DNA of 64,000 nt, taken from positions 186,001-250,000 of the IMG/VR virus record IMGVR_UViG_3300017991_005548; one strand, 5' to 3'. The first letter of the stretch is position 1, and each line of letters opens with the position of its first letter. Positions 14,305 through 42,852 of the stretch are shown here, one piece after another. A program made the translations under genes and the position numbers. Under the pieces are notes generated by a model that made no database searches, was not told the DNA's origin, and saw only the letters and a list, made by a program, of their open reading frames with translations.

Positions 14305-14628
14305 ATGAAAAGATGGGAAGCTGTAGGTAAAAATGATAGTGAGATCAATGAAGATGACATCAATTGGGAGTTGGTAAAAAACAGAGTCAAGTCTCTCCAA
14401 TTAAACAACAATGGTCAAATCATCCGTTTGCCTGACAATATGGAATATATACAAGGGAAGACTGCCAGTGCCAATCTTATGGGTGGAAAAGTTCAGATTG
14501 AATCTAGGTATGTTGGCATAAAAGTTGGAAATAATATAGTTAAGATACGAGTGGATGAAAAAACCAACGATATTTCCATAGAGGTAGAAGATGACCCCAA
14601 TTACATACCTAATCCAAAACAGGACTAG
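14305..14628 (+). CDS. Hypothetical protein, 107 aa
   Basis: GGAG SD before MKRWEAVGK; divergent TATAAT promoter at about 14273. Confidence 0.7.
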   Translation: MKRWEAVGKNDSEINEDDINWELVKNRVKSLQLNNNGQIIRLPDNMEYIQGKTASANLMGGKVQIESRYVGIKVGNNIVKIRVDEKTNDISIEVEDDPNYIPNPKQD

Positions 14629-15016
14629 AATTCCCATCAATACTTTGGATGCAAAGTCCTTAACATTTGGTATGGTGGCTCCAAACGAAACGGCCCAAAC
14701 CAATATCGTACAGCTTTATGTACCAGATGCCGCCGCAATTACCAATATTCGACTTGCATTAATCGATACTGGAGGTATAATGTTTGGATCTACTACTTTT
14801 GGAGTAGATAACAGATCGTTTATCGACAATAATGTAGTACCCGAATCATTTTTTCAAGGTGTTAGCGACAAAAGCGTAAATTCGCCTTACAATATATCAG
14901 TAGCAAACCTAAATAGATTAGCCAGTGAGTACATATATCTGAATGTGGATATCCCAATTGGTCAAACTTTTATCGCTGGAACAATAAGATATCAATGGCT
15001 TTTTGACTATGCATAG
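14591..15016 (+). CDS. Hypothetical beta-rich protein, 141 aa
   Basis: GAGGT SD; operon with the CCA enzyme. Confidence 0.65.
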   Translation: MTPITYLIQNRTRIPINTLDAKSLTFGMVAPNETAQTNIVQLYVPDAAAITNIRLALIDTGGIMFGSTTFGVDNRSFIDNNVVPESFFQGVSDKSVNSPYNISVANLNRLASEYIYLNVDIPIGQTFIAGTIRYQWLFDYA

Positions 15017-15023
15017 GGGTAAT

Positions 15024-17030: not shown

Positions 17031-17616
17031 AGTCGCTTCATACGTTGAGGCATTAAATGTAGCCAATATGGATGGCGAGATAAAGAAACCAGAAGTGCTT
17101 GGAGTTTTGCAATCTCTTCCATCCCCAAATCACATCAAAAGATACTTATCAAATGAAGAAGCAAGAGTCTTGTTTGAAAGCATCCGATGGATTTGGAAAG
17201 AAACAAGTGGTAAAGATATTAGTGAGACATTTAATTTCGAGCCTGCTCCAGAATCATTGCTAGGAAATTACTGGATGCTAAGGAATGGTCTGATCTTTCA
17301 TGGTATCAACCATTATGGCATCATTAAAAGAAATATGACGCTCTTTTCTAACGTCCTGAAGTTAGAGCCGTTTGTACTGCATCAGAAGCTTGCAGGCATA
17401 CCACAAGACCTAATTAAGTACGTTATAGACAATGGGGGGATGAGAATCTTCGTTACGGCTGACAAAAGAGCATATTTCCAAATGAATGATCAGGTTTATG
17501 CCAATTGGGGTAGGGCCAAAGTTAAAGGACTGGACTTCGGAAACAAAGTGGTCAAACTTGTTGACCCCACTACCCGATTTGACGGTTGGAACTCTGGAAT
17601 TACCTTAAAACTCTAG
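17008..17616 (+). CDS. Hypothetical protein, 202 aa
   Basis: Coupled to cca; convergent stop overlaps the next gene (CTAG). Confidence 0.7.
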   Translation: MEDVTANEVASYVEALNVANMDGEIKKPEVLGVLQSLPSPNHIKRYLSNEEARVLFESIRWIWKETSGKDISETFNFEPAPESLLGNYWMLRNGLIFHGINHYGIIKRNMTLFSNVLKLEPFVLHQKLAGIPQDLIKYVIDNGGMRIFVTADKRAYFQMNDQVYANWGRAKVKGLDFGNKVVKLVDPTTRFDGWNSGITLKL

Positions 17617-19370
17617 TTCATAAAGAACGGGTCATCATCATCGTCGTCGTCATCAAATTCTACAGGTGGCAGATCTTCCTCAGGATGTTTTCTCTTAGGT
17701 GGCAATGGTTCGTCTTTCGTTGAAGGGCCAAACAATGATGCAAGTTCTGCTTCAAAATCTACATCATCCCATATCAACTCATCAAGATCTTCTTCTGCAC
17801 CAGGAGAAAGTGGGTCTGATGGATCAACTTCTGCACCATCGATAGCATCTCCAGTACCTTCATCAATGTCACCAGCATCTTTGTCTTCTTCATCTGTTTC
17901 GGTTTCCCAGAAACCAGTTTCATCCAACTGATCTTTGAATCGATTCAGAATTTCTTTCGCTTCTTCTTGATCACTAATAATATAACTTGATGCTTCGAAA
18001 AGCTCTTGTACTGGTCCAGCACCCATATATCCAACCAATCCTAATCCAACGATATCTTCTGGTTTACATTGCATGAATCTTCTGAAGTTCTCAGGACCAA
18101 TCTGCATTTGCATTTGCTCATTTACCAATTCATCTGATTCTTTTAGAATGGCAATCGCCTCTTCCATCTCCAAAGGACGTTGTCCTCTGCTTGCTCTAGA
18201 CTCATTGTCCAATTGGTGATCAGTTGCTTTTGAGAAAATACCCTTGGTAAGTTCCTGACAAATAATAATAAAGTTCATACCTTGAGCTACAGTGTTACCT
18301 TCATCATCATTATGACTCCAACCAGTTCCTTTTTGGCCTAACTGATCAGCCATCATCCTAACCATCTCTGGATCGATGTAATAAAAATGCTGACACATCA
18401 AATTAGAGAACTTTTCATAAAGTCCTAAGAGTTGAGGATTAATGTCATTGATCGCACCTTGGACTTCTTCCATCTCAGTTACATCAAATAATTCATTAAG
18501 TCCTGCGCCTTGAGCCAATGAATTCATGATGATGCGTTTGTTAATTTCACCTTCAAGTTCTGGAGTTATTTCAATATCTACTTCTGGGAAGTCTTCTTCA
18601 CCTGAAGGACCCATCTCTTCCATATATTTGATTTCTAACTCATCCCTATCAACATTCCATTTACGAGAGATAACGTCTTTTGCGAGGTCCATCAACTGCT
18701 CTTCATTTCCTTGTTCCAAAGCTTGGATTTCTCTAAGGAGTCCAAGAATCTGCATCATAACTTGTTGAATGTTAGTGTTTACAGGGATATCCTTCTCTTC
18801 TGCAATATTCGTAATATATTCATAGTTTGCGCGAGCTAGTTCATCACCATAATGAGAAAGCACTGGATTTTGAGAAAGGATATTGTTTTGAGGAATATCT
18901 TGCCAGAAATTTCTTACACCTCTTTGTACTGAGGCATCGTAATCAGCGGCGGCGACCTTCTGTTCAAGAAGACGGATTTCGTAACCACTTATCTTTTTTT
19001 TTAACTCCGAAGTAATGGTCGGCAAGTTATCAGGGGATACTTGTGCGGCCAATGGAAGATCTTCTTCTGGTTCTTCAGCTTTAGGTTTTGGTTGTACGAT
19101 AGGTTTAGGATTACGTGGTCTTCTTTTCCCAGGTTTTCCAGGCTTAGTCTTTTCTCCTGGTGTAGTTCTGGGTTTGGTTGTTGGAGCGGCTGGAGCAGGT
19201 CCTGATCTTTCGGTTGATGGAGCAGGTTCAGCTTCTCTTACCATATCTTCTGCTTGAACAACTAAATTGCCATCTTCGTCTAGCCATCCAGCTTTTTTAC
19301 CAAATTCTTCCCAATCTTTTTGAGACAATTTAACGGTCTTTTTGCCATTGGCGTTTTTTATAATTTTCAT
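17613..19370 (-). CDS. Leader-bearing protein, 585 aa (MKIIKNAN), Pro/Lys-rich linker, acidic tail
   Basis: Long ORF after an AGG-N19-GAA motif. Confidence 0.8.
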   Translation of the reverse strand: MKIIKNANGKKTVKLSQKDWEEFGKKAGWLDEDGNLVVQAEDMVREAEPAPSTERSGPAPAAPTTKPRTTPGEKTKPGKPGKRRPRNPKPIVQPKPKAEEPEEDLPLAAQVSPDNLPTITSELKKKISGYEIRLLEQKVAAADYDASVQRGVRNFWQDIPQNNILSQNPVLSHYGDELARANYEYITNIAEEKDIPVNTNIQQVMMQILGLLREIQALEQGNEEQLMDLAKDVISRKWNVDRDELEIKYMEEMGPSGEEDFPEVDIEITPELEGEINKRIIMNSLAQGAGLNELFDVTEMEEVQGAINDINPQLLGLYEKFSNLMCQHFYYIDPEMVRMMADQLGQKGTGWSHNDDEGNTVAQGMNFIIICQELTKGIFSKATDHQLDNESRASRGQRPLEMEEAIAILKESDELVNEQMQMQIGPENFRRFMQCKPEDIVGLGLVGYMGAGPVQELFEASSYIISDQEEAKEILNRFKDQLDETGFWETETDEEDKDAGDIDEGTGDAIDGAEVDPSDPLSPGAEEDLDELIWDDVDFEAELASLFGPSTKDEPLPPKRKHPEEDLPPVEFDDDDDDDDPFFMN

Positions 19371-19432
19371 AATATCAATATCCTCTAAAAACTAATTGAT
19401 GTTTAATTCCAATTAAGGTAGTAATAATCCTT

Positions 19433-20383
19433 TTATGGATTTACTTCTAGCCCCATTCTTGCATATTCTTCTAGATTTATCGCTGGATTTGAGGCTTTGA
19501 CTTTTACAAAAGTCGAATGGTCACATTCTTTCCACAAATCTTCTCTATCCTCTCCCCCTTCAAAGATTATCATATCATAATCTATGTGTGCGGGAGTCAT
19601 CCACTCTCCATTATGCCAAATCTGGAAATCCACATCTGCATCTCTATATTGGTTCAACTTGTTGATATGGACTTCTGCATAAAGGAAATCTGGTGGTTTT
19701 TCAATTTTTAATGTATATTTATTATAGCCTGCTGGGACTATCCAAGGGTTTTGGAAAACAAAATACAAATCTTTTGAAACTTTTAACAAATCACCTCTTT
19801 GTTGAACCCAATTCCCCTTTTCATACCAATTCTTATTTTGAGAGAATGAAACAATTCCCCTTCTAACAACATTTTGCTTATCCTTATATGTCCCATAATA
19901 TCCTGATTTAGCAATGGGACTGTAAAAAGTCAGATGACTTCCATCGGCCTCCACTTGTCTTCGAGCGTTATTAAAGGCTCTAACTTCTTCATCTTCCTCT
20001 TCTTCAATAGGATCAGCTTCTTGAGGAGCGTTCGGATCAGCTTCTTGAGGAGCGTTCGGATCAGCTTCTTGAGGAGCGTTCGGATCTATCCCTGCCAGAA
20101 GTTGAGCATTTCGTTCTCTCTCCAATAATTCAAAAAGATCATCTGGTTCATCTATGTCTGGAATTTTCATTTTTCCATCTTTCAACGCATCGTCTATTTG
20201 TTCTGGAGTTAGAGGTTTTTTATAACCTTTTATCTTCCCTTGTTTATCAAGTACTGGTTGCCTTTCTTCTTGCGTCCAGCCTATTTCTTTTAGCCTATTC
20301 TGATATTCTTTACATTCTATATAGTCTGCTCTTTGAGCCTCTTTAAGAAAAGAATAAAATTCAAATTGCTTGTACCAACTCAT
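19433..20383 (-). CDS. Hypothetical protein, 316 aa (MSWYKQ...KEAQ)
   Basis: GGAG SD; internal tandem repeat. Confidence 0.75.
   Translation of the reverse strand: MSWYKQFEFYSFLKEAQRADYIECKEYQNRLKEIGWTQEERQPVLDKQGKIKGYKKPLTPEQIDDALKDGKMKIPDIDEPDDLFELLERERNAQLLAGIDPNAPQEADPNAPQEADPNAPQEADPIEEEEDEEVRAFNNARRQVEADGSHLTFYSPIAKSGYYGTYKDKQNVVRRGIVSFSQNKNWYEKGNWVQQRGDLLKVSKDLYFVFQNPWIVPAGYNKYTLKIEKPPDFLYAEVHINKLNQYRDADVDFQIWHNGEWMTPAHIDYDMIIFEGGEDREDLWKECDHSTFVKVKASNPAINLEEYARMGLEVNP
20010..20086. repeat. 24-bp coding tandem repeat x3 (DPNAPQEA)
   Basis: GGATCAGCTTCTTGAGGAGCGTTC repeated three times. Confidence 0.95.
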
Positions 20384-20399
20384 AGAATCTCCTAAAAAC

Positions 20400-20807
20400 T
20401 TATAACATCATTAAATCACTAAAATCTGTATCTTCTCTTTCAGGTGGGTTACAAAGTTCCTCAAGCTGTTCTACAGAAAGGCTTGGCTTAATATTGTCAA
20501 GTCCTCTGAACTCAACAACTTGATCGGTCCCCTTGTTTTTAAGAACTATGGCGTAAAGATCTCCACTAATGAAGTAAACGGATATATCATTTCTAGCAAG
20601 ATATTCTCTGGCATAAGATTCTGACTGGACACTCCAACCACCTTCTTGACCCAGTTCCATTAGTCTTTTTACACCTGTAACATCTTCTTTCGTAAAATTG
20701 AAGTTTCTGTTTGCAGTTTTTAGCCAACCAGATTTCTGACCCATGACCAACCACTCTTTTTTAGACATTTGAACTGTTGTCTTTCCAGCTTTTCTAACTA
20801 GTTTCAT
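20400..20807 (-). CDS. Leader-bearing protein, 135 aa (MKLVRKAG...WLKTAN)
   Basis: Extended leader shared with 17613-19370 and 24815-25213. Confidence 0.75.
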   Translation of the reverse strand: MKLVRKAGKTTVQMSKKEWLVMGQKSGWLKTANRNFNFTKEDVTGVKRLMELGQEGGWSVQSESYAREYLARNDISVYFISGDLYAIVLKNKGTDQVVEFRGLDNIKPSLSVEQLEELCNPPEREDTDFSDLMML

Positions 20808-20810
20808 TAT

Positions 20811-21092
20811 TTACTCCTCAACATTAGCAACATCTTTTTCAGATGGTGCTTGGCCATGTTCCAGATGCATTTTCATTGCATCACGTAGCTTGAATTTATC
20901 TGTATATCTAACAGTAATTACTCCACCTGGATAAATGAGGTCCCAGCAGATTTCACCATCACAATCTTTATTCCTAATCATCCCTCCAGCATCACGCCAT
21001 CTGTCGATTAGTTCTTCCATTTCTCTTCTAAAAACAAAGACATCATTCTCTCTTTGTAAAAATGGCATCGCTATTTTAATAATCTTCATCAA
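20811..21092 (-). CDS. Leader-bearing protein, 93 aa (MMKIIKIA)
   Basis: First gene after an AGG-N19-GAA motif. Confidence 0.7.
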   Translation of the reverse strand: MMKIIKIAMPFLQRENDVFVFRREMEELIDRWRDAGGMIRNKDCDGEICWDLIYPGGVITVRYTDKFKLRDAMKMHLEHGQAPSEKDVANVEE

Positions 21093-21160
21093 ATATCCCC
21101 AAATGAATTGCTTATTCTAATTTATTCTTCAATATCAACCATCTAACCTTCATTAACACA

Positions 21161-21186
21161 AAAAAAGCCCCTTGATTTCAAGGGGC
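21161..21186 (-). terminator. Rho-independent terminator
   Basis: GCCCCTTGA/TCAAGGGGC stem plus T run. Confidence 0.8.
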
Positions 21187-21266
21187 AGAAATAATGCTCT
21201 GTCATTCAGGGAAGCAAAAATAATGCCTTATTCCCAAACAGCATCCATAAGTTCATATATTTATTT

Positions 21267-21842
21267 TTATTTATTCTCGCAGACATCTATTAACTCATAG
21301 ATTAAATCTTTTTGATCATCTGTGAATTTCCATCGGACATTAACATTTTTGTCTGCCCAGTCTTTTGCGCTATTACCTTTCTCTTGCCCCATACTGACCC
21401 AATCAGCCACCATTTCAGCTATGTCAATGTCCCCCATCTTAGTGCCATCAATCATTTTTTCGGGTGGTTTGTCTCTATCATTTCTGTTGATGAGATCGAC
21501 CGTTTCAGATGAATGAAACTCTGGATGATGCCTATTACTTTTTACATGATGCTCAGTAGCTTTATTCATCTTTTCATCCATCCCATCTGGCGGTTCCCAG
21601 TCTACACCATCATCTTTGCATTTATAACTCCATGTTACATAAAGATATGGTTCATACTCTGGATCTTCAAATTTACTATCGTCATGATGACTGGCCTGTT
21701 CGATAAGGTCTTCGAATTTGTCATCGTAGTCAGCAATCTTTTTGCAGTATTTCTGAACTCGCTTGATATGTTCTCTAGTTCTTTTTTCAAAGAACTCTTC
21801 TATTTCTTTCTTCTCACTTTTCGCTGTCCTGATTAATTTCAT
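21267..21842 (-). CDS. HD-like metal-binding protein (DUF5662-like) with MKLIRTAK leader
   Basis: REHIKRV, HHDDSKF, HHVKSNRHHPE, EMVADW; GGAGG SD. Confidence 0.7.
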   Translation of the reverse strand: MKLIRTAKSEKKEIEEFFEKRTREHIKRVQKYCKKIADYDDKFEDLIEQASHHDDSKFEDPEYEPYLYVTWSYKCKDDGVDWEPPDGMDEKMNKATEHHVKSNRHHPEFHSSETVDLINRNDRDKPPEKMIDGTKMGDIDIAEMVADWVSMGQEKGNSAKDWADKNVNVRWKFTDDQKDLIYELIDVCENK

Positions 21843-21864
21843 TGTAATACCTCCATGATTATTA

Positions 21865-21897
21865 TACAAAAAACCCCTTGTAGAGACAAGGGGTTTA
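21865..21897 (-). terminator. Rho-independent terminator with TGTATAAT immediately downstream
   Basis: AAACCCCTTGT/ACAAGGGGTTT stem. Confidence 0.75.
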
Positions 21898-21913
21898 GAT
21901 GTACACAGAAAGC

Positions 21914-22228
21914 TTATTTTTCTGGTTTGGGTTGTGGAGGTTGGGGTCTGCCTTTTCCATGGCCTCTCATGCCTTTTCCAGGGCCATTACCATGTCTTCC
22001 CCTCATGCCTTCACGATGACGCTTCATCCTTTCTTTCATCATAGCAGTTAACTCTGAACGATCTAACTTACCATCTTTGTCAACGTCAAAGTTTTCCATG
22101 ACTCTGTCCAATACCTTTTCCAAACACTTCTCTGGACTTGGACGTTCAGGGCGTTCGGGTCTCTCGGTTTCTTGGGCTGAAAGAGTGCAGGCAAAAACTA
22201 GGGCGAGTAATACGATTAATGCTTTCAT
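21914..22228 (-). CDS. Secreted EF-hand protein, 104 aa
   Basis: Signal peptide MKALIVLLALVFACTLSA-QE; EF-hand loop DVDKDGKLDRSE; AAAGGAG SD. Confidence 0.75.
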   Translation of the reverse strand: MKALIVLLALVFACTLSAQETERPERPERPSPEKCLEKVLDRVMENFDVDKDGKLDRSELTAMMKERMKRHREGMRGRHGNGPGKGMRGHGKGRPQPPQPKPEK

Positions 22229-22354
22229 AATAAGATCTCCTTTATTAAGCAATGAATTTGTTAACGCAAGTGCTGTGCCAAATGTTTTATTGGGTAAATG
22301 GTCACTATAGTGCGCAAATATTAGAATTTTGGTAAAAATAGTGCGCAAAATATG

Positions 22355-22684
22355 CTATCTAAACTCATTTCCCCATTTGTCGAGGTTTTCGTATGGTATT
22401 GTAAACAAATAATCTTCAACTTTGCTTGAACGTGTCCCAAAAGAGACATCATAATATATCCCATCACATTTGACTAAAGCGTGGTTAACTCCATCCTTTC
22501 TACAAACAACAACATCTGCTTTGTATCCCGCTTCTCTTAATGCTTTGCAATACCTTCCACACAGATTACTGCAATCATTGGCATTGGGAATCTTCTTTTC
22601 TTTATTAAGTGACCAGAAAATATCTGGTAATGGTATTTTTTGAAAATTTAGTAATTTGTATAAGAACGATTTGAACCATTTCAT
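22355..22684 (-). CDS. Small transglutaminase/papain-fold protein
   Basis: NDCSN...NHAL...YYD Cys-His-Asp pattern. Confidence 0.55.
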   Translation of the reverse strand: MKWFKSFLYKLLNFQKIPLPDIFWSLNKEKKIPNANDCSNLCGRYCKALREAGYKADVVVCRKDGVNHALVKCDGIYYDVSFGTRSSKVEDYLFTIPYENLDKWGNEFR

Positions 22685-22690
22685 GATCAC

Positions 22691-23107
22691 TTAACATTCG
22701 TATGATGTCCTCTTTTCATACTCTGGGCTTCTAGAATAGCTCGTTATAAATACATCAGGGTAATTAGCACCGAATTGATCTGCCGTAATGTCAATTATTA
22801 CCTTATTGTTTAATTCAACCCAGCAATGGTAACTCTTCATACAGTTCCCGCAAACTTTTTTGGCATCGAACCCTCTTTTATTAAGTTCTGCGCACAATTC
22901 TTCGCTCATCATTTCACAGAATGGAGGAGATAGGAATTTTCCCCCGCTAAGAATTTCGTCTAACCGTTCTCTTTTTTCATCATCGTTGTCATAATCTTCA
23001 TTAACTTCTTCAAGTAGCTCTGAAACATATTCATCCATCATTCTTTCTCTGATCTCTGAAGCGATCTCAAAAATAATCCCCATTCTTGCTACTTTAATGA
23101 TTTTCAT
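22691..23107 (-). CDS. Leader-bearing (MKIIKVAR) transglutaminase/papain-fold protein
   Basis: FCEMMS...YHCWVE...IDITADQF. Confidence 0.6.
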   Translation of the reverse strand: MKIIKVARMGIIFEIASEIRERMMDEYVSELLEEVNEDYDNDDEKRERLDEILSGGKFLSPPFCEMMSEELCAELNKRGFDAKKVCGNCMKSYHCWVELNNKVIIDITADQFGANYPDVFITSYSRSPEYEKRTSYEC

Positions 23108-23108
23108 A

Positions 23109-23390
23109 TTAACCAAGAGTATCTTGAACTCTGTCCTCTCGTAACCAAAATTCTCCACTTCCACCAACAGGTTTCAATTTATATTGTGTCCTGCCGAACA
23201 TTTTACGTTTACTAAGAACTTCAACAGGAAAGAAAACAGAAGTTGACCCTCTTCCAATTTCATAAAACTGAGCATATTTTATTTGTCCAACTTCGCTCTC
23301 ATCCAGTTCCATCTCTTCTGGCACTTTTCTTTCTGGCTCTTCCTTCTGTGGCATAGGAGGAATTACTTGAGCCGCCTTCATTATTTTCAT
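23109..23390 (-). CDS. Leader-bearing protein, 93 aa (MKIMKAAQ)
   Basis: Coupled ORF. Confidence 0.7.
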   Translation of the reverse strand: MKIMKAAQVIPPMPQKEEPERKVPEEMELDESEVGQIKYAQFYEIGRGSTSVFFPVEVLSKRKMFGRTQYKLKPVGGSGEFWLREDRVQDTLG

Positions 23391-23815
23391 TATCCATCTC
23401 CTTTTATTATCTCGAATCCATTATCTAACCAACCTGCAACTGGAACTCCTTCAACAGGAGAGATGCCCATGCCAAATTTCAAAGAGACGACATCATATCC
23501 AAGCATTCTCAAAAGAACCAAAGCTTGACTGGAAGTATGACCAACATAACAAACAAGAAGAATCTTTTTGTCTTTAGGTAATTTATCCAGGTTCTCTTTT
23601 TCTAATAAATCTAGCCAGAAAATGTTCTCTGCTCCTTCGATATGCCCTTCAGCAAAGTCTTCGGGCTTTCTTATGTCTAAGATGAAGAAGTTATCCAAGC
23701 CTTTTTCCTTCAACTCAACAGGAGTGATGTAGTTCCAAGTATCGTCTGTTTTGTCAATGAACTCTTTCAGCTTTTCCGTGAAAGTTAGATCGCATGATAT
23801 TTTTATGAGCTTCAT
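23390..23815 (-). CDS. Rhodanese-domain protein with MKLIKIS leader
   Basis: ILDIRKPEDFAEGHIEGAENI and active-site loop CYVGHTS. Confidence 0.85.
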   Translation of the reverse strand: MKLIKISCDLTFTEKLKEFIDKTDDTWNYITPVELKEKGLDNFFILDIRKPEDFAEGHIEGAENIFWLDLLEKENLDKLPKDKKILLVCYVGHTSSQALVLLRMLGYDVVSLKFGMGISPVEGVPVAGWLDNGFEIIKGDG

Positions 23816-23880
23816 TCACCCTTCCTTAATTCATAAGTATAGTCTTATTATACTTCTAAATAAGGTGTTAGTATCCCTAC

Positions 23881-23965
23881 ACAAAAATACCCCCTGAGGC
23901 GAACCTAAGCAAGTCCATCGCAAGCGATATACTCGCTTTGAGACGAATCCCAAGGGGCAAATACT
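23881..23965 (-). repeat. Repeated terminator-like element, chimeric copy
   Basis: Left half matches 25867-25890, right half matches 24757-24779, with an inserted mini-hairpin. Confidence 0.75.
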
Positions 23966-23968
23966 AAG

Positions 23969-24322
23969 TTACCTGTTGGGTTTTATGACTATTACATCAA
24001 AAACTCCACTATTTTGATCATTAGCTTCATCTAATGAATCTATGTCAGGGGACATTCGCTCTACGGAATCTATGTGTCGCTCATCAGGTGTTATTTCCTC
24101 TAAGGAATCGACATACTGCTCATCAAACTCTTCTAAACTATCTGTAACTTTCATGACAACTTGGCGATTTTCTATTTCATCCCAAATGTCACTAAGATCG
24201 TTATGACTTTCTACGAAACCTAAGCTTCCAACTCTCATTTGGGTATTAGTATCAGTATTGTGTATGTAAATTACCCCAGTTTCATAAACCCTCAGTTCAC
24301 AATTCCTAATGATTATTTCCAC
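23969..24322 (-). CDS. Hypothetical protein, 117 aa (GTG start)
   Basis: AGGAG SD. Confidence 0.65.
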   Translation of the reverse strand: MEIIIRNCELRVYETGVIYIHNTDTNTQMRVGSLGFVESHNDLSDIWDEIENRQVVMKVTDSLEEFDEQYVDSLEEITPDERHIDSVERMSPDIDSLDEANDQNSGVFDVIVIKPNR

Positions 24323-24352
24323 TTTTGGCTCCTAGTTTATTACAGTAATCCT

Positions 24353-24604
24353 TTATTCACCTTCTCTGTACCTTCTTCTTTCCAAACATCTATTGTAATT
24401 GTCTCGATAATTTAACTCTATGTCAGGATTTGGCAACAATCTAAGATTGACACTAATCTGGGTTATAATATCCTCTATGCTATCCCCAATTAGTACTTGC
24501 TTACCTTGTTCAACATTGCACGCAATATAATCTTCCACCAAATTTTCCTCTATCTCGCCAAGAACCTGAAATCCATTAAAAATAGTTACTAGCGTCTTCT
24601 TCAT
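24353..24604 (-). CDS. Hypothetical protein, 83 aa
   Basis: GAGGT SD; TGTATAAT upstream. Confidence 0.65.
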   Translation of the reverse strand: MKKTLVTIFNGFQVLGEIEENLVEDYIACNVEQGKQVLIGDSIEDIITQISVNLRLLPNPDIELNYRDNYNRCLERRRYREGE

Positions 24605-24740
24605 GATTTAACCTCTTTATGCTACTTACCATAAGGACATTATACAGATAACCTTGATTCATTTTTCTCTTGTAAAAAGCAACATTTTTCCACCTGGACT
24701 CTTACTATCAGAGATTCTGGTTTTCAAGCAAAATCGACAA

Positions 24741-24796
24741 AAAAAATGCCCCTTGGGACGAATCCCAAGGGGCAAATATCTTTTACGAAATATCTA
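24741..24796 (-). terminator. Repeated terminator element
   Basis: TGCCCCTTGGGA-CGAA-TCCCAAGGGGCA on the + strand (UUCG loop on the - strand) plus T run. Confidence 0.8.
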
Positions 24797-24814
24797 CAGA
24801 GTAGGTGTAAATAA

Positions 24815-25213
24815 TTAGCTGTCTTGAATTCCTTCTCTTGCTTTTTGGAGTTTGTCCATTAGCATTTGGTGTTCTTCAGGAGTAGGTTCCTCTGGAACTA
24901 TGTCTTCCATTTCGTCATGCTCAAACAAATCCCAAAGCCCTTGCCTTTTTAATTGCTCTTCTATTATAGCCGCACGGAATTTATTGCATTTACCTTCGAA
25001 ATAATCATCTACTTCAGCCAAATCAAGTGGTTGGTTTATAGCATCTTGGAAAATTTTTCTGAACCTGGCTAATACAGCTTCTGTACCTCCATCCCAATCT
25101 CCTTCCAAATCGTTTGCTTTTTTCATCCACCCAGCCTTCTTCCCCATATCAGTCCACTCTTTGCGAGTCATCTTAATCCTAGTTTTTCCACCAGCAGTTT
25201 TAACTATTTTCAT
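24815..25213 (-). CDS. Leader-bearing protein, 132 aa (MKIVKTAG...WMKKAN)
   Basis: GGAG SD; AGG-N18-GAA motif upstream. Confidence 0.75.
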   Translation of the reverse strand: MKIVKTAGGKTRIKMTRKEWTDMGKKAGWMKKANDLEGDWDGGTEAVLARFRKIFQDAINQPLDLAEVDDYFEGKCNKFRAAIIEEQLKRQGLWDLFEHDEMEDIVPEEPTPEEHQMLMDKLQKAREGIQDS

Positions 25214-25292
25214 TTTAATCTCTCCATTAAGGTCTTAATTCTAATTTATTCAAAATCTTTTCTTTTGATCCTTTAATCAGCAGTAATTGTTA

Positions 25293-25820
25293 TTAAGCCT
25301 TTGCCCAAGCCAAGCCTACCCCATTTACACCTAAAGCATTTTTACATGCTTCTATCGTTGTACCTTTAGTTATTACATTATCAACAAAATAAACATTCTT
25401 GTTGTCTAAATCCATAACGTCTGCATCATCTCTGACAATCATATTGTGCTCTTCAACCGTGTAATTAGGAAGATTTTGCTTTCTCCTTTGATGAGATGGT
25501 TCTATACTAGAAGACCGACCCAATGGATCATATATCTCAGATCCAGTTATTTTAGCAATTGCCTCGCATAAAAGCATGTTTGACCCCCTATCCCCTGATG
25601 ATGATGGAACTGGTACTAAGAGGCTATTAGATGCAACATATTTCGCCATAGTATCAGCCGCTATCTTAATGGCATCTGAATTTTTGTTCTTTATTTCGTA
25701 AGATATCTTTCTAACAAAAGCTTCTTGCTGTGATAGTTCTCTTCTTCTAGGAGAAATATATTGATAAATGGCTATATTTTTGCCATCATTTAAAAATTGA
25801 GCTTTTTTATACCAGTTCAT
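25293..25820 (-). CDS. ComF-like phosphoribosyltransferase with MNWYKKAQ leader
   Basis: LVPVPSS and PRPP-binding VYFVDNVITKGTTIEAC. Confidence 0.75.
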   Translation of the reverse strand: MNWYKKAQFLNDGKNIAIYQYISPRRRELSQQEAFVRKISYEIKNKNSDAIKIAADTMAKYVASNSLLVPVPSSSGDRGSNMLLCEAIAKITGSEIYDPLGRSSSIEPSHQRRKQNLPNYTVEEHNMIVRDDADVMDLDNKNVYFVDNVITKGTTIEACKNALGVNGVGLAWAKA

Positions 25821-25860
25821 AACAATATTAATTCAAAAATCTGTTCTTCTGACCCTTTGT

Positions 25861-25921
25861 AAACACAAAAATATCCCCTGAGGCGAACCTCAGGGGATAA
25901 ATACTTTCTACGAGATATCTA
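25861..25921 (-). terminator. Repeated terminator element after the major capsid gene
   Basis: TATCCCCTGAGG-CGAA-CCTCAGGGGATA on the + strand. Confidence 0.85.
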
Positions 25922-25930
25922 AGCTTTCGC

Positions 25931-26794
25931 TTAGCTACCAGCGGTAACTGTGACCTTGGCTACTGCGTAGGTATTGATGATTACAATACCAACTTCCTCA
26001 TAAATTACCCAACCGAGGCGGAGCTTCTTTGGATCGTCTGCTGGGAGGACGGTGATATCCTGACGAATCGGGAATGCACCAACGTACTCAGCAGGAGCGA
26101 GCAAGAAGACGGTATCGGTAGGCATCTTTGAAGATACGTGAATATCAGCAGTAAAGAGATGTCCGAACAAACCAGTTGTAAGAACTTCTTTCTGTGTTGC
26201 TTCATCATAGACAGTCTTACCAAATCCACGAATGTCAGCGTAACGAAGAGCATGCATAACAAGCTTACCTACTGTGAGGTCGTGCTGTTCGATGGTTGCG
26301 AAAGCTTGGTTCAAGGCGTTAAGGGTAAGAGCACCACCAGTTGAAACAACGGTATGTGCGGCATCAATTGCGGCGGCGATAGCGTTGAAGATGTTAAGAT
26401 CTTCTTCCTTCTGAATCGCTTCTTTAGCTTTGATCTGAGCACGGTCTACAATGTAGAATCTACGAGCTTTAATCTCACTCAAGCGAATAGTAGGATTGGT
26501 TGCAATCTCGAACGTAGGAACGAGAATTTCTTCACCTTCGGTAATACCATCAGGTACAGCGCCACGACGAGGAATAACCTGGGCGGTCTGGCGAACGTCT
26601 TTCTCGTAACGTGCATAAGCGCCCTGAGGAAGCTCATCCACCATGAGAAGTTTACGTCCAACTGCTTGATATTCCAATGCTCTACGAATTGGCTCGACCA
26701 TGGCCTGAGCCAATGCTACTCTACCTTCAGGTGTCTCAAGCGCCTGAGCGATAAGAGCTTCTCTTTCTGCATTAACAGATCTTTTATTAATCAT
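25931..26794 (-). CDS. Major capsid protein, HK97 fold, 287 aa
   Basis: E-loop/P-domain pattern (GRKLLMVDELPQG, VPTFEIATNP, GWVIYEEVG); strong GGAG SD; downstream of protease and decoration genes. Confidence 0.85.
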   Translation of the reverse strand: MINKRSVNAEREALIAQALETPEGRVALAQAMVEPIRRALEYQAVGRKLLMVDELPQGAYARYEKDVRQTAQVIPRRGAVPDGITEGEEILVPTFEIATNPTIRLSEIKARRFYIVDRAQIKAKEAIQKEEDLNIFNAIAAAIDAAHTVVSTGGALTLNALNQAFATIEQHDLTVGKLVMHALRYADIRGFGKTVYDEATQKEVLTTGLFGHLFTADIHVSSKMPTDTVFLLAPAEYVGAFPIRQDITVLPADDPKKLRLGWVIYEEVGIVIINTYAVAKVTVTAGS

Positions 26795-26864
26795 TTTGTT
26801 TCTCTCCTAATTAGTTGTTCTATAGGGGGTAATAGCCTATAAAATAAACCTTTTTTACTATACC

Positions 26865-27386
26865 TTATACAAGAAGCTTGTATTCGATATAAGTGTTAGA
26901 GTTATCGCCAGCAAGGGCCTGATCGCCATTGATGTCGATGCCAGGTACGCCACTTGGGTATGAGCCAGCGGCACGAGTCAAACGAGCAACAGGAGTTCCA
27001 GTGGTCAAACCACCTTCATCTGTAGTGTCGAGTACACCAAGGGCATTACCATAAAGCAATGCGCCAGGATTGGCGGATGATACGTTTGAAGCGAACTGGT
27101 CGGTTGCAAACTCACCACCTGAGTGATAGACAGTCATTTTACCTGAAGCTTTGGTTTCGTCAAAATAATCGGAAACCCTGTTCTGCCATCCTGCTGAGAT
27201 GCCAGGCATTGCTGAAGCGCTAGTTGACTTGGTGTCACCAGCTACACCGTAAACGGCGGCGTTGGTGCTTGCAAGTACTACTTCGCCAGATGTATTAAGA
27301 GAGACAAGCTGTCCTTCTTTAATAGTTTCGCCAGAGGCGACATCCTGTTCAGCGGCTACTACATGAAATTTTTCTACAAGAGCCAT
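26865..27386 (-). CDS. Capsid decoration/cement-like protein
   Basis: Small G/A/T-rich beta protein immediately upstream of the MCP. Confidence 0.65.
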   Translation of the reverse strand: MALVEKFHVVAAEQDVASGETIKEGQLVSLNTSGEVVLASTNAAVYGVAGDTKSTSASAMPGISAGWQNRVSDYFDETKASGKMTVYHSGGEFATDQFASNVSSANPGALLYGNALGVLDTTDEGGLTTGTPVARLTRAAGSYPSGVPGIDINGDQALAGDNSNTYIEYKLLV

Positions 27387-27675
27387 TTTTTGTTTCTCCT
27401 TTTAGAGTTAATTTTTTGTCAATTTTCATTGACGGTTTTTTAACCAATTTGGTAAACGAAAACCAGCTTAACGCTACGATCTTTCTTCATTGATTTACTG
27501 AAAAAGTTGCCGTCATCTTATTAATCAAAACTGCAAACATTGAATTACTTACCAACTTGTTATATCCCTTTGTTCTATATTAATAAGGTGATTTCCTGCT
27601 TACTATACAAAAAAACCACGAAATATTGCTGATAAAAGCCATATTTCGTGGTTTTGGCACAAAAATGATTGTTGT

Positions 27676-27909
27676 TTATTCTTTTAGAGACTTTCTTCTT
27701 TGCAATTCTTTTTTCATAGCATCTCTGGTTTTATCTAACTCTTCTAAGTCATATCCCCAATCGATACCATAATTTTCCTGTTCAATAATTTGATTATCAT
27801 AATAAAGCCAAGCCAACTCATTTTCTAATTCTTCTGTTGGAATTTCTTCTATTGGTTCTTTAGATATAATGTATTTATGTTCTTTGTTAGACACTCTTAT
27901 TAATTTCAT
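27676..27909 (-). CDS. Leader-bearing protein, 77 aa (MKLIRVSN)
   Basis: Coupled ORF. Confidence 0.65.
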   Translation of the reverse strand: MKLIRVSNKEHKYIISKEPIEEIPTEELENELAWLYYDNQIIEQENYGIDWGYDLEELDKTRDAMKKELQRRKSLKE

Positions 27910-28157
27910 AATTTCCCCAATATTTCATCTAATCTTGTTGAAATCTCGACATCTGATAATTGTCTGAATGGAGCCTTAAATACAGTCCCAGACGGCAATG
28001 TAACCTGCACCTTGTCTCCACCTCCCAACACCTCTCTAAACTCATGATAAGTTAATCTATTGGGCTTGGCTCTTAATCCCTTGACATATACGACATTGTT
28101 GTTTGAGTCTACCCAAACAATCGATGGAATTTTAGAAGATATCTTGATTATTTTCAT
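27906..28157 (-). CDS. Leader-bearing protein, 83 aa (MKIIKISS)
   Basis: First gene after an AGG-N19-GAA motif. Confidence 0.65.
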   Translation of the reverse strand: MKIIKISSKIPSIVWVDSNNNVVYVKGLRAKPNRLTYHEFREVLGGGDKVQVTLPSGTVFKAPFRQLSDVEISTRLDEILGKL

Positions 28158-28265: not shown

Positions 28266-31200
28266 TTAACGTTGGTCGTTGTCAATCAAGTTGTCATTTA
28301 ACAACTTGGAACCAATCGTAAACGCTCCAGCGATTTTGTCCTGGAAGCTAGGCTCCTGGGCAGGCTGTGATTGAATTACGATAGCTGGAAGACCAGTTCC
28401 AGCAGTTTTAACTTGCTGTTCAGTAGAAGCAGTTTTAACGGCCTTAACTGGGAACATAGTTTCCGCAACTGAAGCAATTTTATCAACTTCAAACTGAGCT
28501 AATGCAGTAACAACATTATCAAATGTGCTCTTATCAGAAGCAATTCTGTTGTTAGCGGCTAACCATGAAGCAGTACGAAGAGCTTCCTCTTTACGTGCTT
28601 CCTTGATTCTAGCAAGTTGTTCTTCTCTTTTCTGTTGTACCTGTTTGAGATACTTATCATTGATGCCAGGCATATCTGACTGAGTTTCCTTCTCAACGCC
28701 CATATAAGCGTTATCGATAGGTACATCAGGCTTAGGTGCGTTAACGTCGATGTTATCTGGTCCTTCCTGTCCCATAGTAGCTTTTGCTCTAGGAACGTCT
28801 GGATTTGCCATCTTTACATCGATGTTGTCAGCGCCTTCATGACCCAAAGAAGCATCGGCTCTAGGAACTCCAGCTTCAACATCACCCTCAACGGTGTCAA
28901 CTTCTTTCATCTTTTTCGCTAATGCAAGCTGTCTCTGAGCCTCTTTGAGGTTTTTCTCAGCTTCAGCAATTACAGTACCTTTAATCTCATTATTGATTGC
29001 AGGCATATCTGATTGAGTAGCTTTCTCAATTCCCATGTAGGAACTATCAACAGCTACGTCTGGCAGACCAGCAGGTGGATTAATGTTATCTGCGCCTTCA
29101 TGGCCCATGGTAGCATTAGATCTAGGAACCTGAGGTTTGGCCATAGGAACGTCAATATTATCTGCTCCTTCATTCATCATAGTTGCCTTACTACGAGGTA
29201 CTCCAGCTTCAACGTCTTTCTCAATAGTTTTGATGAGCTTAGGCTTACCTGCCAACTTAATGTTGGACTCAGCGCCAGAGCGTCTTACTCTTGAGGAATT
29301 CATTGCCAAAGCCTCTGCAAGTGCGTCGGTATCAAATGTTTCCATATCTTCTCCTTCTGGAACTTCTTCAGCTTCAAATGCAACGTCCTCTGCGATGTCC
29401 TCTTCCAAGGCTTCATCACCAGTATTTTCAACAACTTCGAGGTTGTCTCCAGTGATGGTTACAGATTCAACTGCGACTTCTTCTGGTTCTTCAATAATCT
29501 CATCAACCTCTACATCGACTGAGTCGAGTGGTTCGAGATCATCTCCGATTTCAACTTCTTCCAAGATAGCCTGAGCTTTCTTGGCTAAGTTTTCTTCTTT
29601 CTGAATGAACAATTCGTTCATTGTAGCGAGATCGTATTGGCTAAGTGCAATCTTTCCTTCTTTTGCTTCATCAGCAAAAGCTTGGACGTAAATGTTATCA
29701 GATTCTTCTTTAGCGAACTTCTTCTTAATGCAGTTGCAAATTGAAGTTGCTTGAACAACATCATGTCCTTTGCTCTTTTGATCTTCAATACATTCATCCA
29801 TTGGATCTACTTGCATTAAAGTGTCAGCCAATTTTTTCATTTGACGGACTTTGGTAAAACCAAGTCTCTTCAGTTCTTTGCATACGCATTCAGCCAATGG
29901 CTTATCTTTGCAAGGACCGAATCTAGCTACAGTGTTTCCACCATAAGTTCTAGCAATTCTTTCAACGCAGTTAGCAGTTGGGAACGTATCGGCGTTAGCC
30001 TGAGCAGTCTTCAACATTCCAACAACCTTAAGCTTAGAAGCGAACTTCCTTGCTTCTTCTTTGCATTCTGGGCAACTATTGTCAGGAGAAAGATCCCATT
30101 CAACTCTTAACAAGCCGTTTGAAGGATTCTTACTACTAACAATGAGGTTCTTCTCGAAAGAAGTTCCGCATTGTCCGCATTCGCATTTGGTGCGACCATC
30201 GCCGCTTGCGATGACATCACATTTCTTATTTCCGCAAGCTGGGCAGACATCGCCATGGGCCTCTCTGTTAGCGGCAATACGAACAATAGAATCTTTATCA
30301 ATTCTAGTTTGAGCGGCAACTGGAAGTGCTGGCATTTCTTCAGGCTCTTCAGGGCCTTCAACGTCTTCCATACCTTCTTCGCCAACGCTTTTGGTAGGTT
30401 TGATGATTCTAAATTCAATTTCTTTCTTAATGAGAGCTTCGTATTCGGCTCCGCAATTCTGGCAGTTACCGATAATTCCACCGTCATCTTCTTTAGTTAC
30501 ATCAACATCAGATGAACCACACTCTGGGCAAATGCTCCAAGGAGCTTGCTTTTCGCCAACAGTTGGGATCTCATCCTCTAACTCATCCTCATTACCAGTG
30601 GTGAGAGCTTGAAGAGCAGGATCTTCTCCCATTGGAGGAGCGTCAAGACCTTCCTCAGGAGCGCCTGGAGCGGCGACTTCGCCTGCGGCCCCTGGCATTC
30701 CGCCACCCATTGGTGACTGAGCAGTTCTTTTCATCTTCTTATTATTATAGGCAACCTGATTAAGGTTTTCCATTTCAATATCAGCGTCAAGTCCGTCCTC
30801 AATGCCTTCTCCTACGAGATCGCCTTCAGGAACGATTTCTTCTTCAATTGGTGCTACTTCTTCGCCAATCGGAATTTCAACTGACTCTTCGCCAGCATCA
30901 GTCTGGACAGCGATTTGAATGGTATTACCATCAATAGTAACATTAGTGATAGAAGCAAGCTTCATATTTTCAGTTGCTAAAGCGCCTTTAGCAAACTTAA
31001 CGATATCTTTCTTGAAAGTGGCAGAAGTCTTTTGAGAACCAAGTTCTTCGAAATCGGTTTCAATTACGATGTCTGCTCCATCAAGTTTTTCAGGATTAAG
31101 AATTTCTTCCTGAGCCTGGACTCGCTTTCTTGATTCCAAAGAAGCTAGAATTTCTTCTCTTTCAGCATCTCTTTTAGCCTTTTCGTTTTTAACGACAGCT

Positions 31201-41437: not shown

Positions 41438-41441
41438 AAAA

Positions 41442-42470: not shown

Positions 42471-42586
42471 GTTAATATCATCCTGTAATTAATGACTTTT
42501 CGAACTTATTCGTTAAAAATAAACAAAAGTCCTATTCCCATGTCATACTTAGTTCAACAAATATTATACACAAACCTTCATAAAAC

Positions 42587-42616
42587 ACAAAAAAAGACCA
42601 CCCGAAGGGGTGGTCC
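42587..42616 (-). terminator. Rho-independent terminator
   Basis: GACCACCC/GGGTGGTC stem plus T run. Confidence 0.8.
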
Positions 42617-42646
42617 TTAATGGTACATTAGTATGTTAGAAAACGG

Positions 42647-42850: not shown

Positions 42851-42852
42851 GA

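What the first reader, a model, noticed from the sequence alone, without database searches (positions are those of the whole stretch)
17613..25213. Extended ~30-aa mobile leader module on three proteins
Seen: GKKTVKLSQKDWEEFGKKAGWL (19370), GKTTVQMSKKEWLVMGQKSGWLKTAN (20807) and GKTRIKMTRKEWTDMGKKAGWMKKAN (25213) follow the short leader. Two end in a KxA-N site before unrelated bodies. This looks like a shuffled folded targeting domain.
Basis: seen in the sequence. Interest (0 to 1): 0.6.

Follow-up and report, generated by a model that had tools for sequence, protein, structure and literature searches.

The report
Shuffled N-terminal mini-domain of megaphage proteins
Three otherwise unrelated proteins of a phage-G-like megaphage start with the same ~33-residue basic mini-domain, which also heads thousands of other unrelated metagenomic proteins. 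It ends in the K-x-A motif that recurs in the phage's head-protease polyprotein, so it is most likely a removable tag for proteins loaded into the capsid.

Summary
The ORFs at 17613-19370, 20400-20807 and 24815-25213 (all on the minus strand) share only their first 30-34 residues. There are exactly three copies in the 296-kb record.

The module is a real, undescribed domain.
- A 14-sequence profile finds 2,092 protein clusters among 1.84 billion representatives, almost always at residues 1-34.
- 139 bodies among the top hits fall into 123 unrelated groups.
- AlphaFold2 gives a confident beta-hairpin plus helix for residues 1-30.
- Pfam, NCBIfam, PHROGs, PDB fold searches and the literature give nothing.

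The window is the head region of a megaphage whose capsid protein is 55% identical to that of Bacillus phage G. It contains portal, an 1856-aa protease polyprotein, decoration protein and capsid protein.

The new result concerns K-x-A, which closes both the short leader (MKIIKxA) and the module (GW-Φ-K-x-A).
- K-x-A is by far the most positionally conserved spaced pair in the protease polyprotein: 16 sites, next best 8.
- It flanks the protease domain.
- About 10% of neighbouring ORFs have its Ala at residue 6 or 7.

Best reading, inferred and not shown: a basic pro-domain in the style of a capsid-targeting sequence, bounded by prohead-protease sites, on a hypervariable set of small acidic proteins.

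The parts
24815..25213 (-). Gene p132 (132 aa). The module is residues 1-33, at 25115-25213: MKIVKTAGGKTRIKMTRKEWTDMGKKAGWMKKA|N. The body is acidic.
   Evidence: A strong terminator follows at 24747-24774.
20400..20807 (-). Gene p135 (135 aa). The module is residues 1-32, at 20712-20807, and ends GWLKTA|N. The body is unrelated to the other two and acidic.
17613..19370 (-). Gene p585 (585 aa). The module is residues 1-30, at 19281-19370, with tail GWLDEDG and no K-x-A. A Pro/Lys-rich linker and a very acidic body follow. Orthologues at 39-42% identity keep the module.
28266..33836 (-). 1856-aa polyprotein. A head-maturation protease domain lies near the N-terminus, with invariant NH and SMG motifs. 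It has 31 K-x-A motifs against 14.8 expected. In the aligned relatives, sites are positionally conserved at Ala 6, 27, 257, 553, 774, 829, 949, 952, 1266, 1278, 1337, 1375 and 1529. A further conserved site lies near the C-terminus at Ala 1803.
   Evidence: phrog_18299, E 1.1e-18. NF045541, E 4e-5..
25931..26794 (-). Major capsid protein, 55% identical to Bacillus phage G gp27. Its own terminator lies at 25872-25899.
   Evidence: phrog_2522, E 1.8e-72..
26865..27386 (-). 173-aa protein in the position of phage G gp26, the capsid decoration protein. It is conserved next to the capsid gene in relatives.
   Evidence: The assignment rests on position and conservation; no family hit was found.
37842..40070 (-). 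Portal protein with a C-terminal DUF559/REase-like endonuclease domain (residues about 660-730). A K-L-A site lies near the N-terminus (…PAKLA|TS).
25293..25820 (-). 175-aa ComF/phosphoribosyltransferase-like protein with the leader variant MNWYKKAQ. It lies in the same terminator-bounded unit as p132.
19433..20383 (-). 316-aa protein with the N-terminus MSWYKQ, which resembles the MxWYK leader variants but has no K-x-A. It lies between p135 and p585.
20811..28157 (-). Run of small genes carrying only the 7-residue leader M-K-Φ-Φ-[KR]-x-[AST]. The genes are 20811-21089, 21267-21842 (DUF5662), 22691-23107, 23109-23390, 23390-23815 (rhodanese), 27676-27909 and 27906-28157. Further copies lie at 40106-41353 and 47575-49959.
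   Evidence: 12 of 13 such ORFs of the record lie in a 33-gene stretch, binomial p 4.5e-11.

Best explanation
The module is a small, basic, independently folding N-terminal domain of about 33 residues. Strand 1 is the short leader MKΦΦKxA. A turn (SGK), strand 2 (xTΦKΦS) and a helix (xxEWxxΦGKKAGW) follow.

It ends in an unstructured tail, Φ-K-x-A. I read K-x-A as the recognition and cleavage motif of this clade's prohead protease.

I propose the module works like the capsid-targeting sequences of T4 internal proteins. It marks a hypervariable set of mostly small, acidic accessory proteins for incorporation into the assembling head. It is then clipped off, or degraded at its three K-x-A motifs, by the protease of the 1856-aa protease-scaffold polyprotein. 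The mature bodies are left in the capsid to travel with the DNA.

Shown here:
- the module, its predicted fold, its spread and the diversity of its bodies
- the head-gene context
- the enrichment, positional conservation and N-terminal fixation of K-x-A

Inferred: that K-x-A is cleaved, that the proteins are packaged, and which partner the hairpin-helix binds.
For: 1. The module is confined to residues 1-34 of three unrelated proteins. Protein-level selection is evident from the DNA alignment.

2. 2,092 clusters carry it, nearly always at residues 1-34 of proteins 33-585 aa long. 123 body groups occur among 139 bodies.

3. The AlphaFold2 model is confident for residues 1-30. Confidence falls over the tail, yet K at +2 and A at +4 after GW remain conserved, in 113 and 99 of 164 instances. 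Conservation stops right after the Ala.

4. The three genes lie 0.7-8.3 kb downstream of the capsid gene, in the portal / protease-polyprotein / decoration / capsid cluster.

5. In 14 homologues of the polyprotein, K-x-A ranks first of all 400 spaced residue pairs. It has 16 sites conserved in at least 7 of 14 sequences, against 8 for the runner-up. Observed over expected is 1.94. Sites lie at the N-terminus, directly after the protease domain, and about 50 residues from the C-terminus.

6. The four most K-x-A-enriched proteins of the whole record are the polyprotein and three genes just upstream of the portal.

7. Site context matches the module tail W-[MLI]-K-x-A-[QNGAES]. P5 is hydrophobic, P3 is K, P1 is A and P1' is S/Q/A/G.

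8. Among 965 ORFs around the capsid gene of relatives, the Ala of K-x-A falls at residue 7 in 72 and at residue 6 in 25. Other positions have about 5-10.

9. Phage G's protease gp19 has 8 K-x-A against 2.5 expected, flanking its domain. Phage G gp13 and gp38 start MKRLI.K.A.

10. The module is basic (mean +6.6). Bodies are acidic in 80% of cases and have no membrane segments.
Against: - No experiment or proteome shows cleavage at K-x-A or packaging of any module protein.
- Module genes also occur far from head genes. Examples are a tandem array of four in a non-structural fragment (G011), two copies about 220 kb from the capsid gene in the overlapping 476-kb contig, and scattered copies in G010.
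- Some proteins carry internal or repeated modules.
- About a quarter to a third of modules lack the K-x-A tail, p585 and its orthologues among them.
- Relatives with capsid proteins 68-73% identical, and phage G itself, lack the extended module although they keep K-x-A-rich protease polyproteins.
- K-x-A could be a docking motif rather than a cleavage motif.
Confidence: 0.45

Rival explanations
1. The module is a cytoplasmic binding domain that anchors diverse accessory proteins to a common conserved target during infection. The target could be nucleic acid or a conserved host or phage hub protein. The module has nothing to do with capsids, and its K-x-A tail is simply part of the binding surface.
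For: - The module is very basic (+6.6) with conserved Lys and Trp.
- Its sequence stays 45-65% identical across distant contigs while everything around it changes.
- Copies occur in non-structural regions and as tandem arrays or internal repeats.
- Some modules lack the K-x-A tail.
Against: - There is no similarity to any known nucleic-acid-binding family or fold.
- It does not explain why the tail and the leader share the motif that dominates the protease polyprotein.
- It does not explain why that motif sits at residue 7 of about 10% of head-region ORFs.
- It does not explain the clustering of leader ORFs in the head region.
Confidence: 0.27
2. The module is a homo-oligomerisation tag. The hairpins would pair to form a small sheet, as in swapped-hairpin or ribbon-helix-helix dimers, giving avidity or assembly to small variable proteins.
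For: - A 30-residue hairpin-helix unit is marginal as a monomer.
- Both residues 3 and 4 of strand 1 are hydrophobic.
- 27 of the 150 top hits carry 2-3 copies.
Against:
- No family or fold match to AbrB/SpoVT or ribbon-helix-helix domains was found.
- The short form lacks strand 1 altogether.
Confidence: 0.1
3. It is a leader peptide of ribosomally made, post-translationally modified peptides: a conserved leader, a hypervariable core and a cleavage site.
For: - A conserved leader sits on hypervariable, often small and sometimes Cys-rich bodies; 13 of 117 have at least two CxxC.
- Conservation has a sharp boundary at K-x-A.
Against: - Bodies reach 551 aa and include an AAA ATPase and other folded domains.
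- The leader itself is predicted to be a folded domain.
- Neither the family scans of the window's genes nor the Pfam annotations of the L100/L101 loci turned up a maturase or transporter gene next to a module gene. L084 was inspected only as ORF translations.
- The short leader sits on the head protease itself.
Confidence: 0.03
4. It is chance similarity or plain paralogy, an artefact of Lys-rich N-termini favoured for translation initiation.
For: AAA-rich starts (MK…) are common in AT-rich genomes.
Against: - E-values are 1e-7 to 3e-11 pairwise and about 1e-21 by HMM.
- W20, G24, G28 and W29 are invariant in the 14-sequence alignment.
- There are 2,092 hits at E <= 1e-3 in 1.84e9 proteins.
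- The bodies are unrelated.
Confidence: 0.01

Closest known systems
Capsid targeting sequences (CTS) of phage T4 internal proteins (IPI, IPII, IPIII, Alt), cleaved by the gp21 prohead protease. From established knowledge; reviewed in PMC9026906 and PMC5694885 (listed, not read here).
   Same: - A short N-terminal element is shared by otherwise unrelated, fast-evolving proteins.
- It ends in the motif that also recurs in the head scaffold and protease proteins.
- The scaffold carries many such sites.
   Different: - There is no sequence similarity. T4 uses about 10 residues ending in (L/I)-x-E; here it is M-x-Φ-Φ-K-x-A.
- Here the leader is extended into a folded 30-residue hairpin-helix with a second site.
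- The module can be internal or repeated.
- Packaging and cleavage are not demonstrated.
Propeptides of head and ejection proteins in giant phages phiKZ, 201phi2-1 and SPN3US, removed by a gp21-like protease at S/A/G-x-E (PMC5694885, PMC7411985 and PMC10052503; seen by title and abstract only).
   Same: - A jumbo phage head is loaded with many proteins that a prohead protease matures at a simple three-residue motif.
- That motif can be recognised bioinformatically.
   Different: - The motif is different (K-x-A) and the phage lineage is different (phage-G-like).
- Those propeptides are not one conserved, shuffled domain.
Herpesvirus assemblin-scaffold precursor, cleaved at (V/L/I)-x-A|S release and maturation sites (from memory).
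   Same: - A protease is fused to a long scaffold-like region.
- Candidate sites with Ala at P1 and Ser preferred at P1' lie right after the protease domain and near the C-terminus.
   Different: - Here Lys is fixed at P3 and there are many more sites.
- This is bacterial-virus lineage.
- The cleavage is only inferred.
Shared N-terminal propeptides of capsid and scaffold proteins of staphylococcal phage 80alpha, with 13-14 residues removed by the prohead protease (from memory).
   Same: A conserved short N-terminal peptide on several head proteins is removed at a common site.
   Different: - In 80alpha only two proteins carry it.
- It is not a folded domain and does not sit on hypervariable cargo.

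Membership tests
T4-type capsid targeting sequence / internal proteins | A shared N-terminal element on otherwise unrelated proteins | tested here: met
T4-type capsid targeting sequence / internal proteins | The element ends at the prohead protease's cleavage motif, which also recurs in scaffold and protease proteins | tested here: inconclusive
   K-x-A is shared with, enriched in and positionally conserved in the protease polyprotein. The cleavage itself is not shown.
T4-type capsid targeting sequence / internal proteins | Sequence relationship to the T4 CTS (about 10 residues ending L/I-x-E) and a gp21-family protease | tested here: not met
   The motif here is M-x-Φ-Φ-K-x-A. The protease matches phrog_18299 and NF045541, an HK97-type prohead protease fusion. 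The T4 sequence is recalled from memory.
T4-type capsid targeting sequence / internal proteins | The proteins are found processed inside virions and are injected | not testable with these tools
   This needs virion proteomics of a cultured or enriched module-bearing phage.
Any curated protein family (Pfam-A, NCBIfam, PHROGs) | A profile match over the module | tested here: not met
   No hit over the module at E <= 0.1 for the three proteins or for typical hits.
AbrB/SpoVT swapped-hairpin or ribbon-helix-helix DNA-binding domains | A family profile or fold match, plus the complete fold (four strands, or a strand with two helices) | tested here: not met
   No Pfam hit. The model is a hairpin plus one helix only. 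Foldseek E > 4 and best VIA Z 2.1.
RiPP leader peptide | A short precursor with neighbouring maturase or transporter genes | tested here: not met
   Bodies reach 551 aa and include enzymes. No maturase or transporter family was found among the window's scanned genes or in the Pfam annotations of loci L100/L101. L084 was inspected only as ORF translations.
Phage-G-like megaphages (Donellivirus relatives) | A capsid protein, decoration-capsid gene order and prohead protease homologous to phage G | tested here: met
   The capsid protein is 55% identical to gp27. The protease profile hits phage G gp19 at E 2.3e-51.

The most novel reading that the evidence does not exclude
Phage-G-like megaphages use a dedicated, folded, protease-delimited 33-residue loading domain, an elaboration of a 7-residue M-x-Φ-Φ-K-x-A capsid-targeting leader. 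With it they pack a huge, rapidly shuffled repertoire of small acidic effector proteins into the head, for co-injection with the DNA. The repertoire runs to thousands of clusters and more than a hundred unrelated bodies. K-x-A would be the previously unknown cleavage code of their prohead protease.
Probability: 0.35. Interest if true: 0.85.

Novelty: new variant of a known kind. Interest (0 to 1): 0.68.

Why it matters
If the reading is right, three things follow.

1. It gives a simple sequence code, an N-terminal M-x-Φ-Φ-K-x-A leader or the hairpin-helix module ending in Φ-K-x-A. With it, the packaged and injected protein arsenal of uncultured megaphages could be read straight from metagenomes.

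2. It gives the cleavage specificity of a large family of prohead proteases.

3. It gives a compact natural tag that might load foreign proteins into very large capsids.

Even if the capsid link is wrong, the module is a widespread domain (2,092 clusters at 50% identity) that no family database or paper I could find describes. It is a clean example of domain shuffling in phage accessory genes.

Tried and rejected
**Complex prediction.** The protease domain (polyprotein residues 42-237) was folded with the module (residues 1-44). The result was no verdict (score 0.05, mark 0.32), so it is neither support nor evidence against.

**Fold searches.** Searching with the module model gave no meaningful match. 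Foldseek against PDB gave E > 4, and the wide VIA-align search gave a best Z of 2.1.

**ESM Atlas look-alikes.** Only unnamed clusters below the trust level were returned.

**Literature.**
- Strings GKKAGW, KTASGK, WYKKAQ and IGKKAG: no paper.
- Searches on capsid targeting in huge or jumbo phages found nothing describing this module.
- The phage G multi-omics paper (PMC12484599) never uses the term 'N-terminal', and none of the 12 passages shown (of 44 hits) concerns such a leader.
- The phage G cryo-EM and proteomics paper is not in the library.

**Sequence searches.**
- tblastn of a typical module against 50,697 GenBank phages: no match, although the low-complexity filter may have interfered.
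- Scan of 185,579 prokaryote genomes: no relative.
- Word-index search with p132: only itself.

**Conserved neighbour.** A search for a neighbour gene that could be the partner found only the capsid, protease and decoration genes recurring. The sampling is biased to close relatives.

**An apparent counter-example.** G011 looked like a module-bearing phage without this capsid protein or protease. I rejected it as a counter-example because it is a non-structural fragment of a related megaphage.

**Transcript-level explanation.** No shared sigma-70-type promoter was found; 30 sites were found against 31 expected.

**Protease domain against PDB sequences.** No match.


Full report
**1. Observation**

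- 17613-19370 (585 aa)
- 20400-20807 (135 aa)
- 24815-25213 (132 aa)

BLASTP finds similarity only in residues 1-30/34, at 47-56% identity and E from 1e-7 to 3e-11. Nothing significant aligns in the bodies.

An HMM of the three modules recovers only these three from the six-frame translation of the whole record (E about 1e-21, next hit E > 1). The DNA of the three modules differs at many synonymous positions, and the upstream regions do not align. Selection therefore acts on the peptide.

**2. Genomic setting**

The three genes lie just downstream of the major capsid gene, 25931-26794 (phrog_2522, E 1.8e-72). Upstream on the same strand are:
- a 173-aa protein in the position of phage G's decoration protein
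- two small ORFs
- an 1856-aa protein with a head-maturation protease domain near its N-terminus (phrog_18299, E 1.1e-18)
- a 1305-aa protein of unknown function
- the portal

The capsid protein is 55% identical to gp27 of Bacillus phage G. A profile of the protease domain hits phage G gp19 at E 2.3e-51.

An IMG/VR contig of 476 kb overlaps this record and extends it, so the genome is at least about 508 kb. This is a phage-G-like megaphage.

Strong intrinsic terminators follow the capsid gene and p132.

**3. The module is a widespread, shuffled domain**

Eleven more copies turned up near the capsid gene of related IMG/VR contigs. A 14-sequence profile was then searched against 1.84 billion representative proteins.
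- 2,092 proteins matched at E <= 1e-3, and 153 at E <= 1e-10.
- The match almost always covered residues 1-34 of proteins 33-585 aa long.

The consensus is MKΦΦKTASGKxTIKMSKxEWxxIGKKAGWΦKxA.

After masking the module, 139 bodies among the 150 best hits fall into 123 BLAST groups. Pfam recognises only scattered domains in them: one AAA ATPase, TMEM65, PGDYG and a Lar-like zinc ribbon.

Properties of module and bodies:
- The module is strongly basic, with mean net charge +6.6.
- Bodies are short (median 84 aa) and acidic in 80% of cases.
- None has a membrane-like segment.

There are three variations on the basic pattern.
- A short form (MKIKLSKSQWEEMGKKAGW…) lacks the first strand.
- 27 of the 150 best hits have two or three copies. 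Some are genuinely internal, with no Met before them.
- p585 has orthologues at 39-42% identity that keep the module.

The module is absent from all of the following:
- Pfam, NCBIfam and PHROGs
- 185,579 prokaryote genomes
- GenBank phages
- phage G
- five complete relatives whose capsid proteins are 68-73% identical

I found no paper that describes it.

**4. Structure**

AlphaFold2 was run on a 127-sequence alignment of residues 1-44.
- Residues 1-30 have pLDDT 91-95.
- They form a beta-hairpin (residues 2-5 and 11-14) and a helix (17-27).
- Confidence falls to about 60 over the tail, W-Φ-K-x-A.

The short leader MKΦΦKxA is therefore strand 1 of the mini-domain. Fold searches gave nothing meaningful, as expected for 30 residues.

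**5. The K-x-A motif links the module to the head protease**

After the invariant GW, position +2 is Lys in 113 of 164 instances and +4 is Ala in 99 (Ser in 21). Conservation then stops. The leader carries the same Φ-Φ-K-x-A.

I aligned 14 homologues of the protease polyprotein and counted how often each of the 400 spaced residue pairs (a-x-b) is positionally conserved.
- K-x-A has 16 sites conserved in at least 7 of 14 sequences.
- The runners-up are GxE with 8 and ExQ with 5.
- K-x-A occurs at 1.94 times expectation, whereas AxK, KxS and ExA are at 0.7-1.0.

The conserved sites fall at telling places:
- the extreme N-terminus (MLIKVA; MIKTA|S)
- directly after the protease domain (LEKNA|SQEE)
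- several points along the long C-terminal region
- about 50 residues from the C-terminus (VKTA|S)

The site context matches the module tail W-[MLI]-K-x-A-[QNGAES]. P5 is hydrophobic, P3 is Lys, P1 is Ala and P1' is Ser, then Gln, Ala or Gly.

Other observations point the same way.
- Across the whole record, the four proteins most enriched in K-x-A are the polyprotein and three genes just upstream of the portal.
- Among 965 non-redundant ORFs around the capsid gene of 80 relatives, the Ala of K-x-A falls at residue 7 in 72 and at residue 6 in 25. Other positions have roughly 5-10.
- In this record, 12 of 13 ORFs with the leader lie in one 33-gene stretch of the head region (binomial p 4.5e-11).
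- MNWYKKAQ, MKIYRLAQ, MRIFKLSA and MSWYKTAS are variants of the same leader. The DUF5662 orthologue carries MSWYKTAS in one relative and MKLIRTAKS here.
- Phage G lacks the extended module, but its protease gp19 has 8 K-x-A against 2.5 expected, flanking the domain. Its gp13 and gp38 start MKRLI.K.A.

**6. Interpretation**

The most economical reading is that K-x-A is the cleavage motif of this clade's prohead protease. It could at least be a docking motif.

On this reading the 1856-aa protein is a protease-scaffold fusion that is cut into pieces. T4 gp22 is degraded at its many L/I-x-E sites in the same way, and herpesvirus assemblin precursors are cut at x-A|S sites.

The 7-residue leader would be the counterpart of the T4 capsid targeting sequence. 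The module would be an elaborated, folded version with a second site at its end. A third K-x-A lies inside GKKAG.

The cargo would be a hypervariable set of small acidic proteins, loaded into the head and released from a basic pro-domain.

None of the cleavage, packaging or binding steps is shown. My confidence that the module is a head-associated pro- or targeting domain is about 0.45.

**7. What speaks against it, and rivals**

- Module genes also lie far from head genes. There are two copies about 220 kb from the capsid gene in the overlapping contig, scattered copies in G010, and a tandem array of four in G011.
- G011 proved to be a non-structural fragment of a related megaphage. It shares a syntenic block at 45-67% identity with this record. 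Its lack of capsid and protease genes is therefore uninformative.
- Internal repeats occur, and tails without K-x-A occur.

A cytoplasmic binding domain for nucleic acid or a conserved hub protein is the main rival (0.27). An oligomerisation tag (0.10), a RiPP-type leader (0.03) and chance (0.01) follow.

The only complex prediction, protease domain with module, returned no verdict and is not used as evidence.

**8. Novelty**

As a sequence family, the module is undescribed in every resource I could query. As a mechanism, it would be a new variant of the known capsid-targeting and propeptide principle. Its distinguishing features would be a new motif (K-x-A), a folded tag and an unusually large shuffled cargo set.

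The read-mapping tools were not used.

Noticed in passing
window 20811-28157, 40106-41353 and 47575-49959; also 8656-9666: A 7-residue N-terminal leader, M-[KR]-Φ-Φ-[KR]-x-[AST], heads 13 ORFs of the record, 12 of them in the head region. MRLIRTAQ at 8656-9666 is a near variant. In relatives, about 10% of ORFs near the capsid gene have K-x-A with its Ala at residue 6 or 7.
   Followed up: yes
window 25293-25820 and 19433-20383; genome 55002-55310 and 275511-275990: N-termini MNWYKKAQ, MSWYKQ, MYWYK and MNWYKE. MNWYKKAQ-type starts recur in relatives and appear to be variants of the same leader. The 175-aa protein is ComF/phosphoribosyltransferase-like.
   Followed up: partly
window 28266-33836 (-): The 1856-aa protein has an N-terminal HK97-type prohead protease domain with invariant Cys clusters, suggesting a zinc site. 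Its long C-terminal region carries 31 K-x-A motifs. It is probably a protease-scaffold fusion.
   Followed up: partly
window 37842-40070 (-): The portal protein carries a C-terminal DUF559 / MTES_1575 restriction-endonuclease-like domain (residues about 660-730, E 5.6e-13). This is an unusual fusion.
   Followed up: no
window 40106-44877 (-): Three genes just upstream of the portal (443 aa, 342 aa and a 674-aa AAA ATPase) are, after the polyprotein, the most K-x-A-enriched proteins of the record.
   Followed up: partly
window 21914-22348 (-): A small protein has an internal start followed by a signal-peptide-like stretch (MKALIVLLALVFACTLSAQ). It also has an EF-hand-like DVDKDGKLDRSEL loop and a basic Gly/Pro-rich tail.
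   Followed up: no
window 24747-24774, 25872-25899, 21167-21186 and 21871-21896: Four strong minus-strand intrinsic terminators (stems of 8-12 bp plus a T run) cut the region downstream of the capsid gene into small units. One unit is the ComF-like gene plus p132.
   Followed up: partly
window 25234-25251 and 21110-21127 (-): The motif GAATAAATTAGAAT(W)AAG lies 20-40 nt upstream of the starts of p132 and of the 93-aa leader ORF. There are 3 matches at up to 3 mismatches against 0.5 expected. It may be a phage promoter element.
   Followed up: partly
window 15003-17030 (+): A tRNA nucleotidyltransferase (CCA-adding enzyme) gene lies in a short plus-strand island (14591-17616) within an otherwise minus-strand region.
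   Followed up: no
whole record G000 versus IMGVR_UViG_3300018080_008436: The 296-kb record is a fragment. It overlaps a 476-kb IMG/VR contig that extends 212 kb upstream and holds two more module genes. Protein look-ups report a 524,692-bp contig. CheckV-style completeness values for related fragments (for example 87% for G011) appear unreliable.
   Followed up: partly
L084 5175-13138 (G011): A tandem array of four module genes with unrelated bodies sits beside an IS200/IS605-type TnpB-like ORF (390 aa) and an MKIYKIAQ-leader ORF.
   Followed up: partly
L102 (Bacillus phage G 25.5-33.3 kb): The region downstream of phage G's capsid gene holds several small paralogous proteins with a C-P-I-C zinc-ribbon motif. 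This echoes the CxxC-rich bodies of some module proteins.
   Followed up: no
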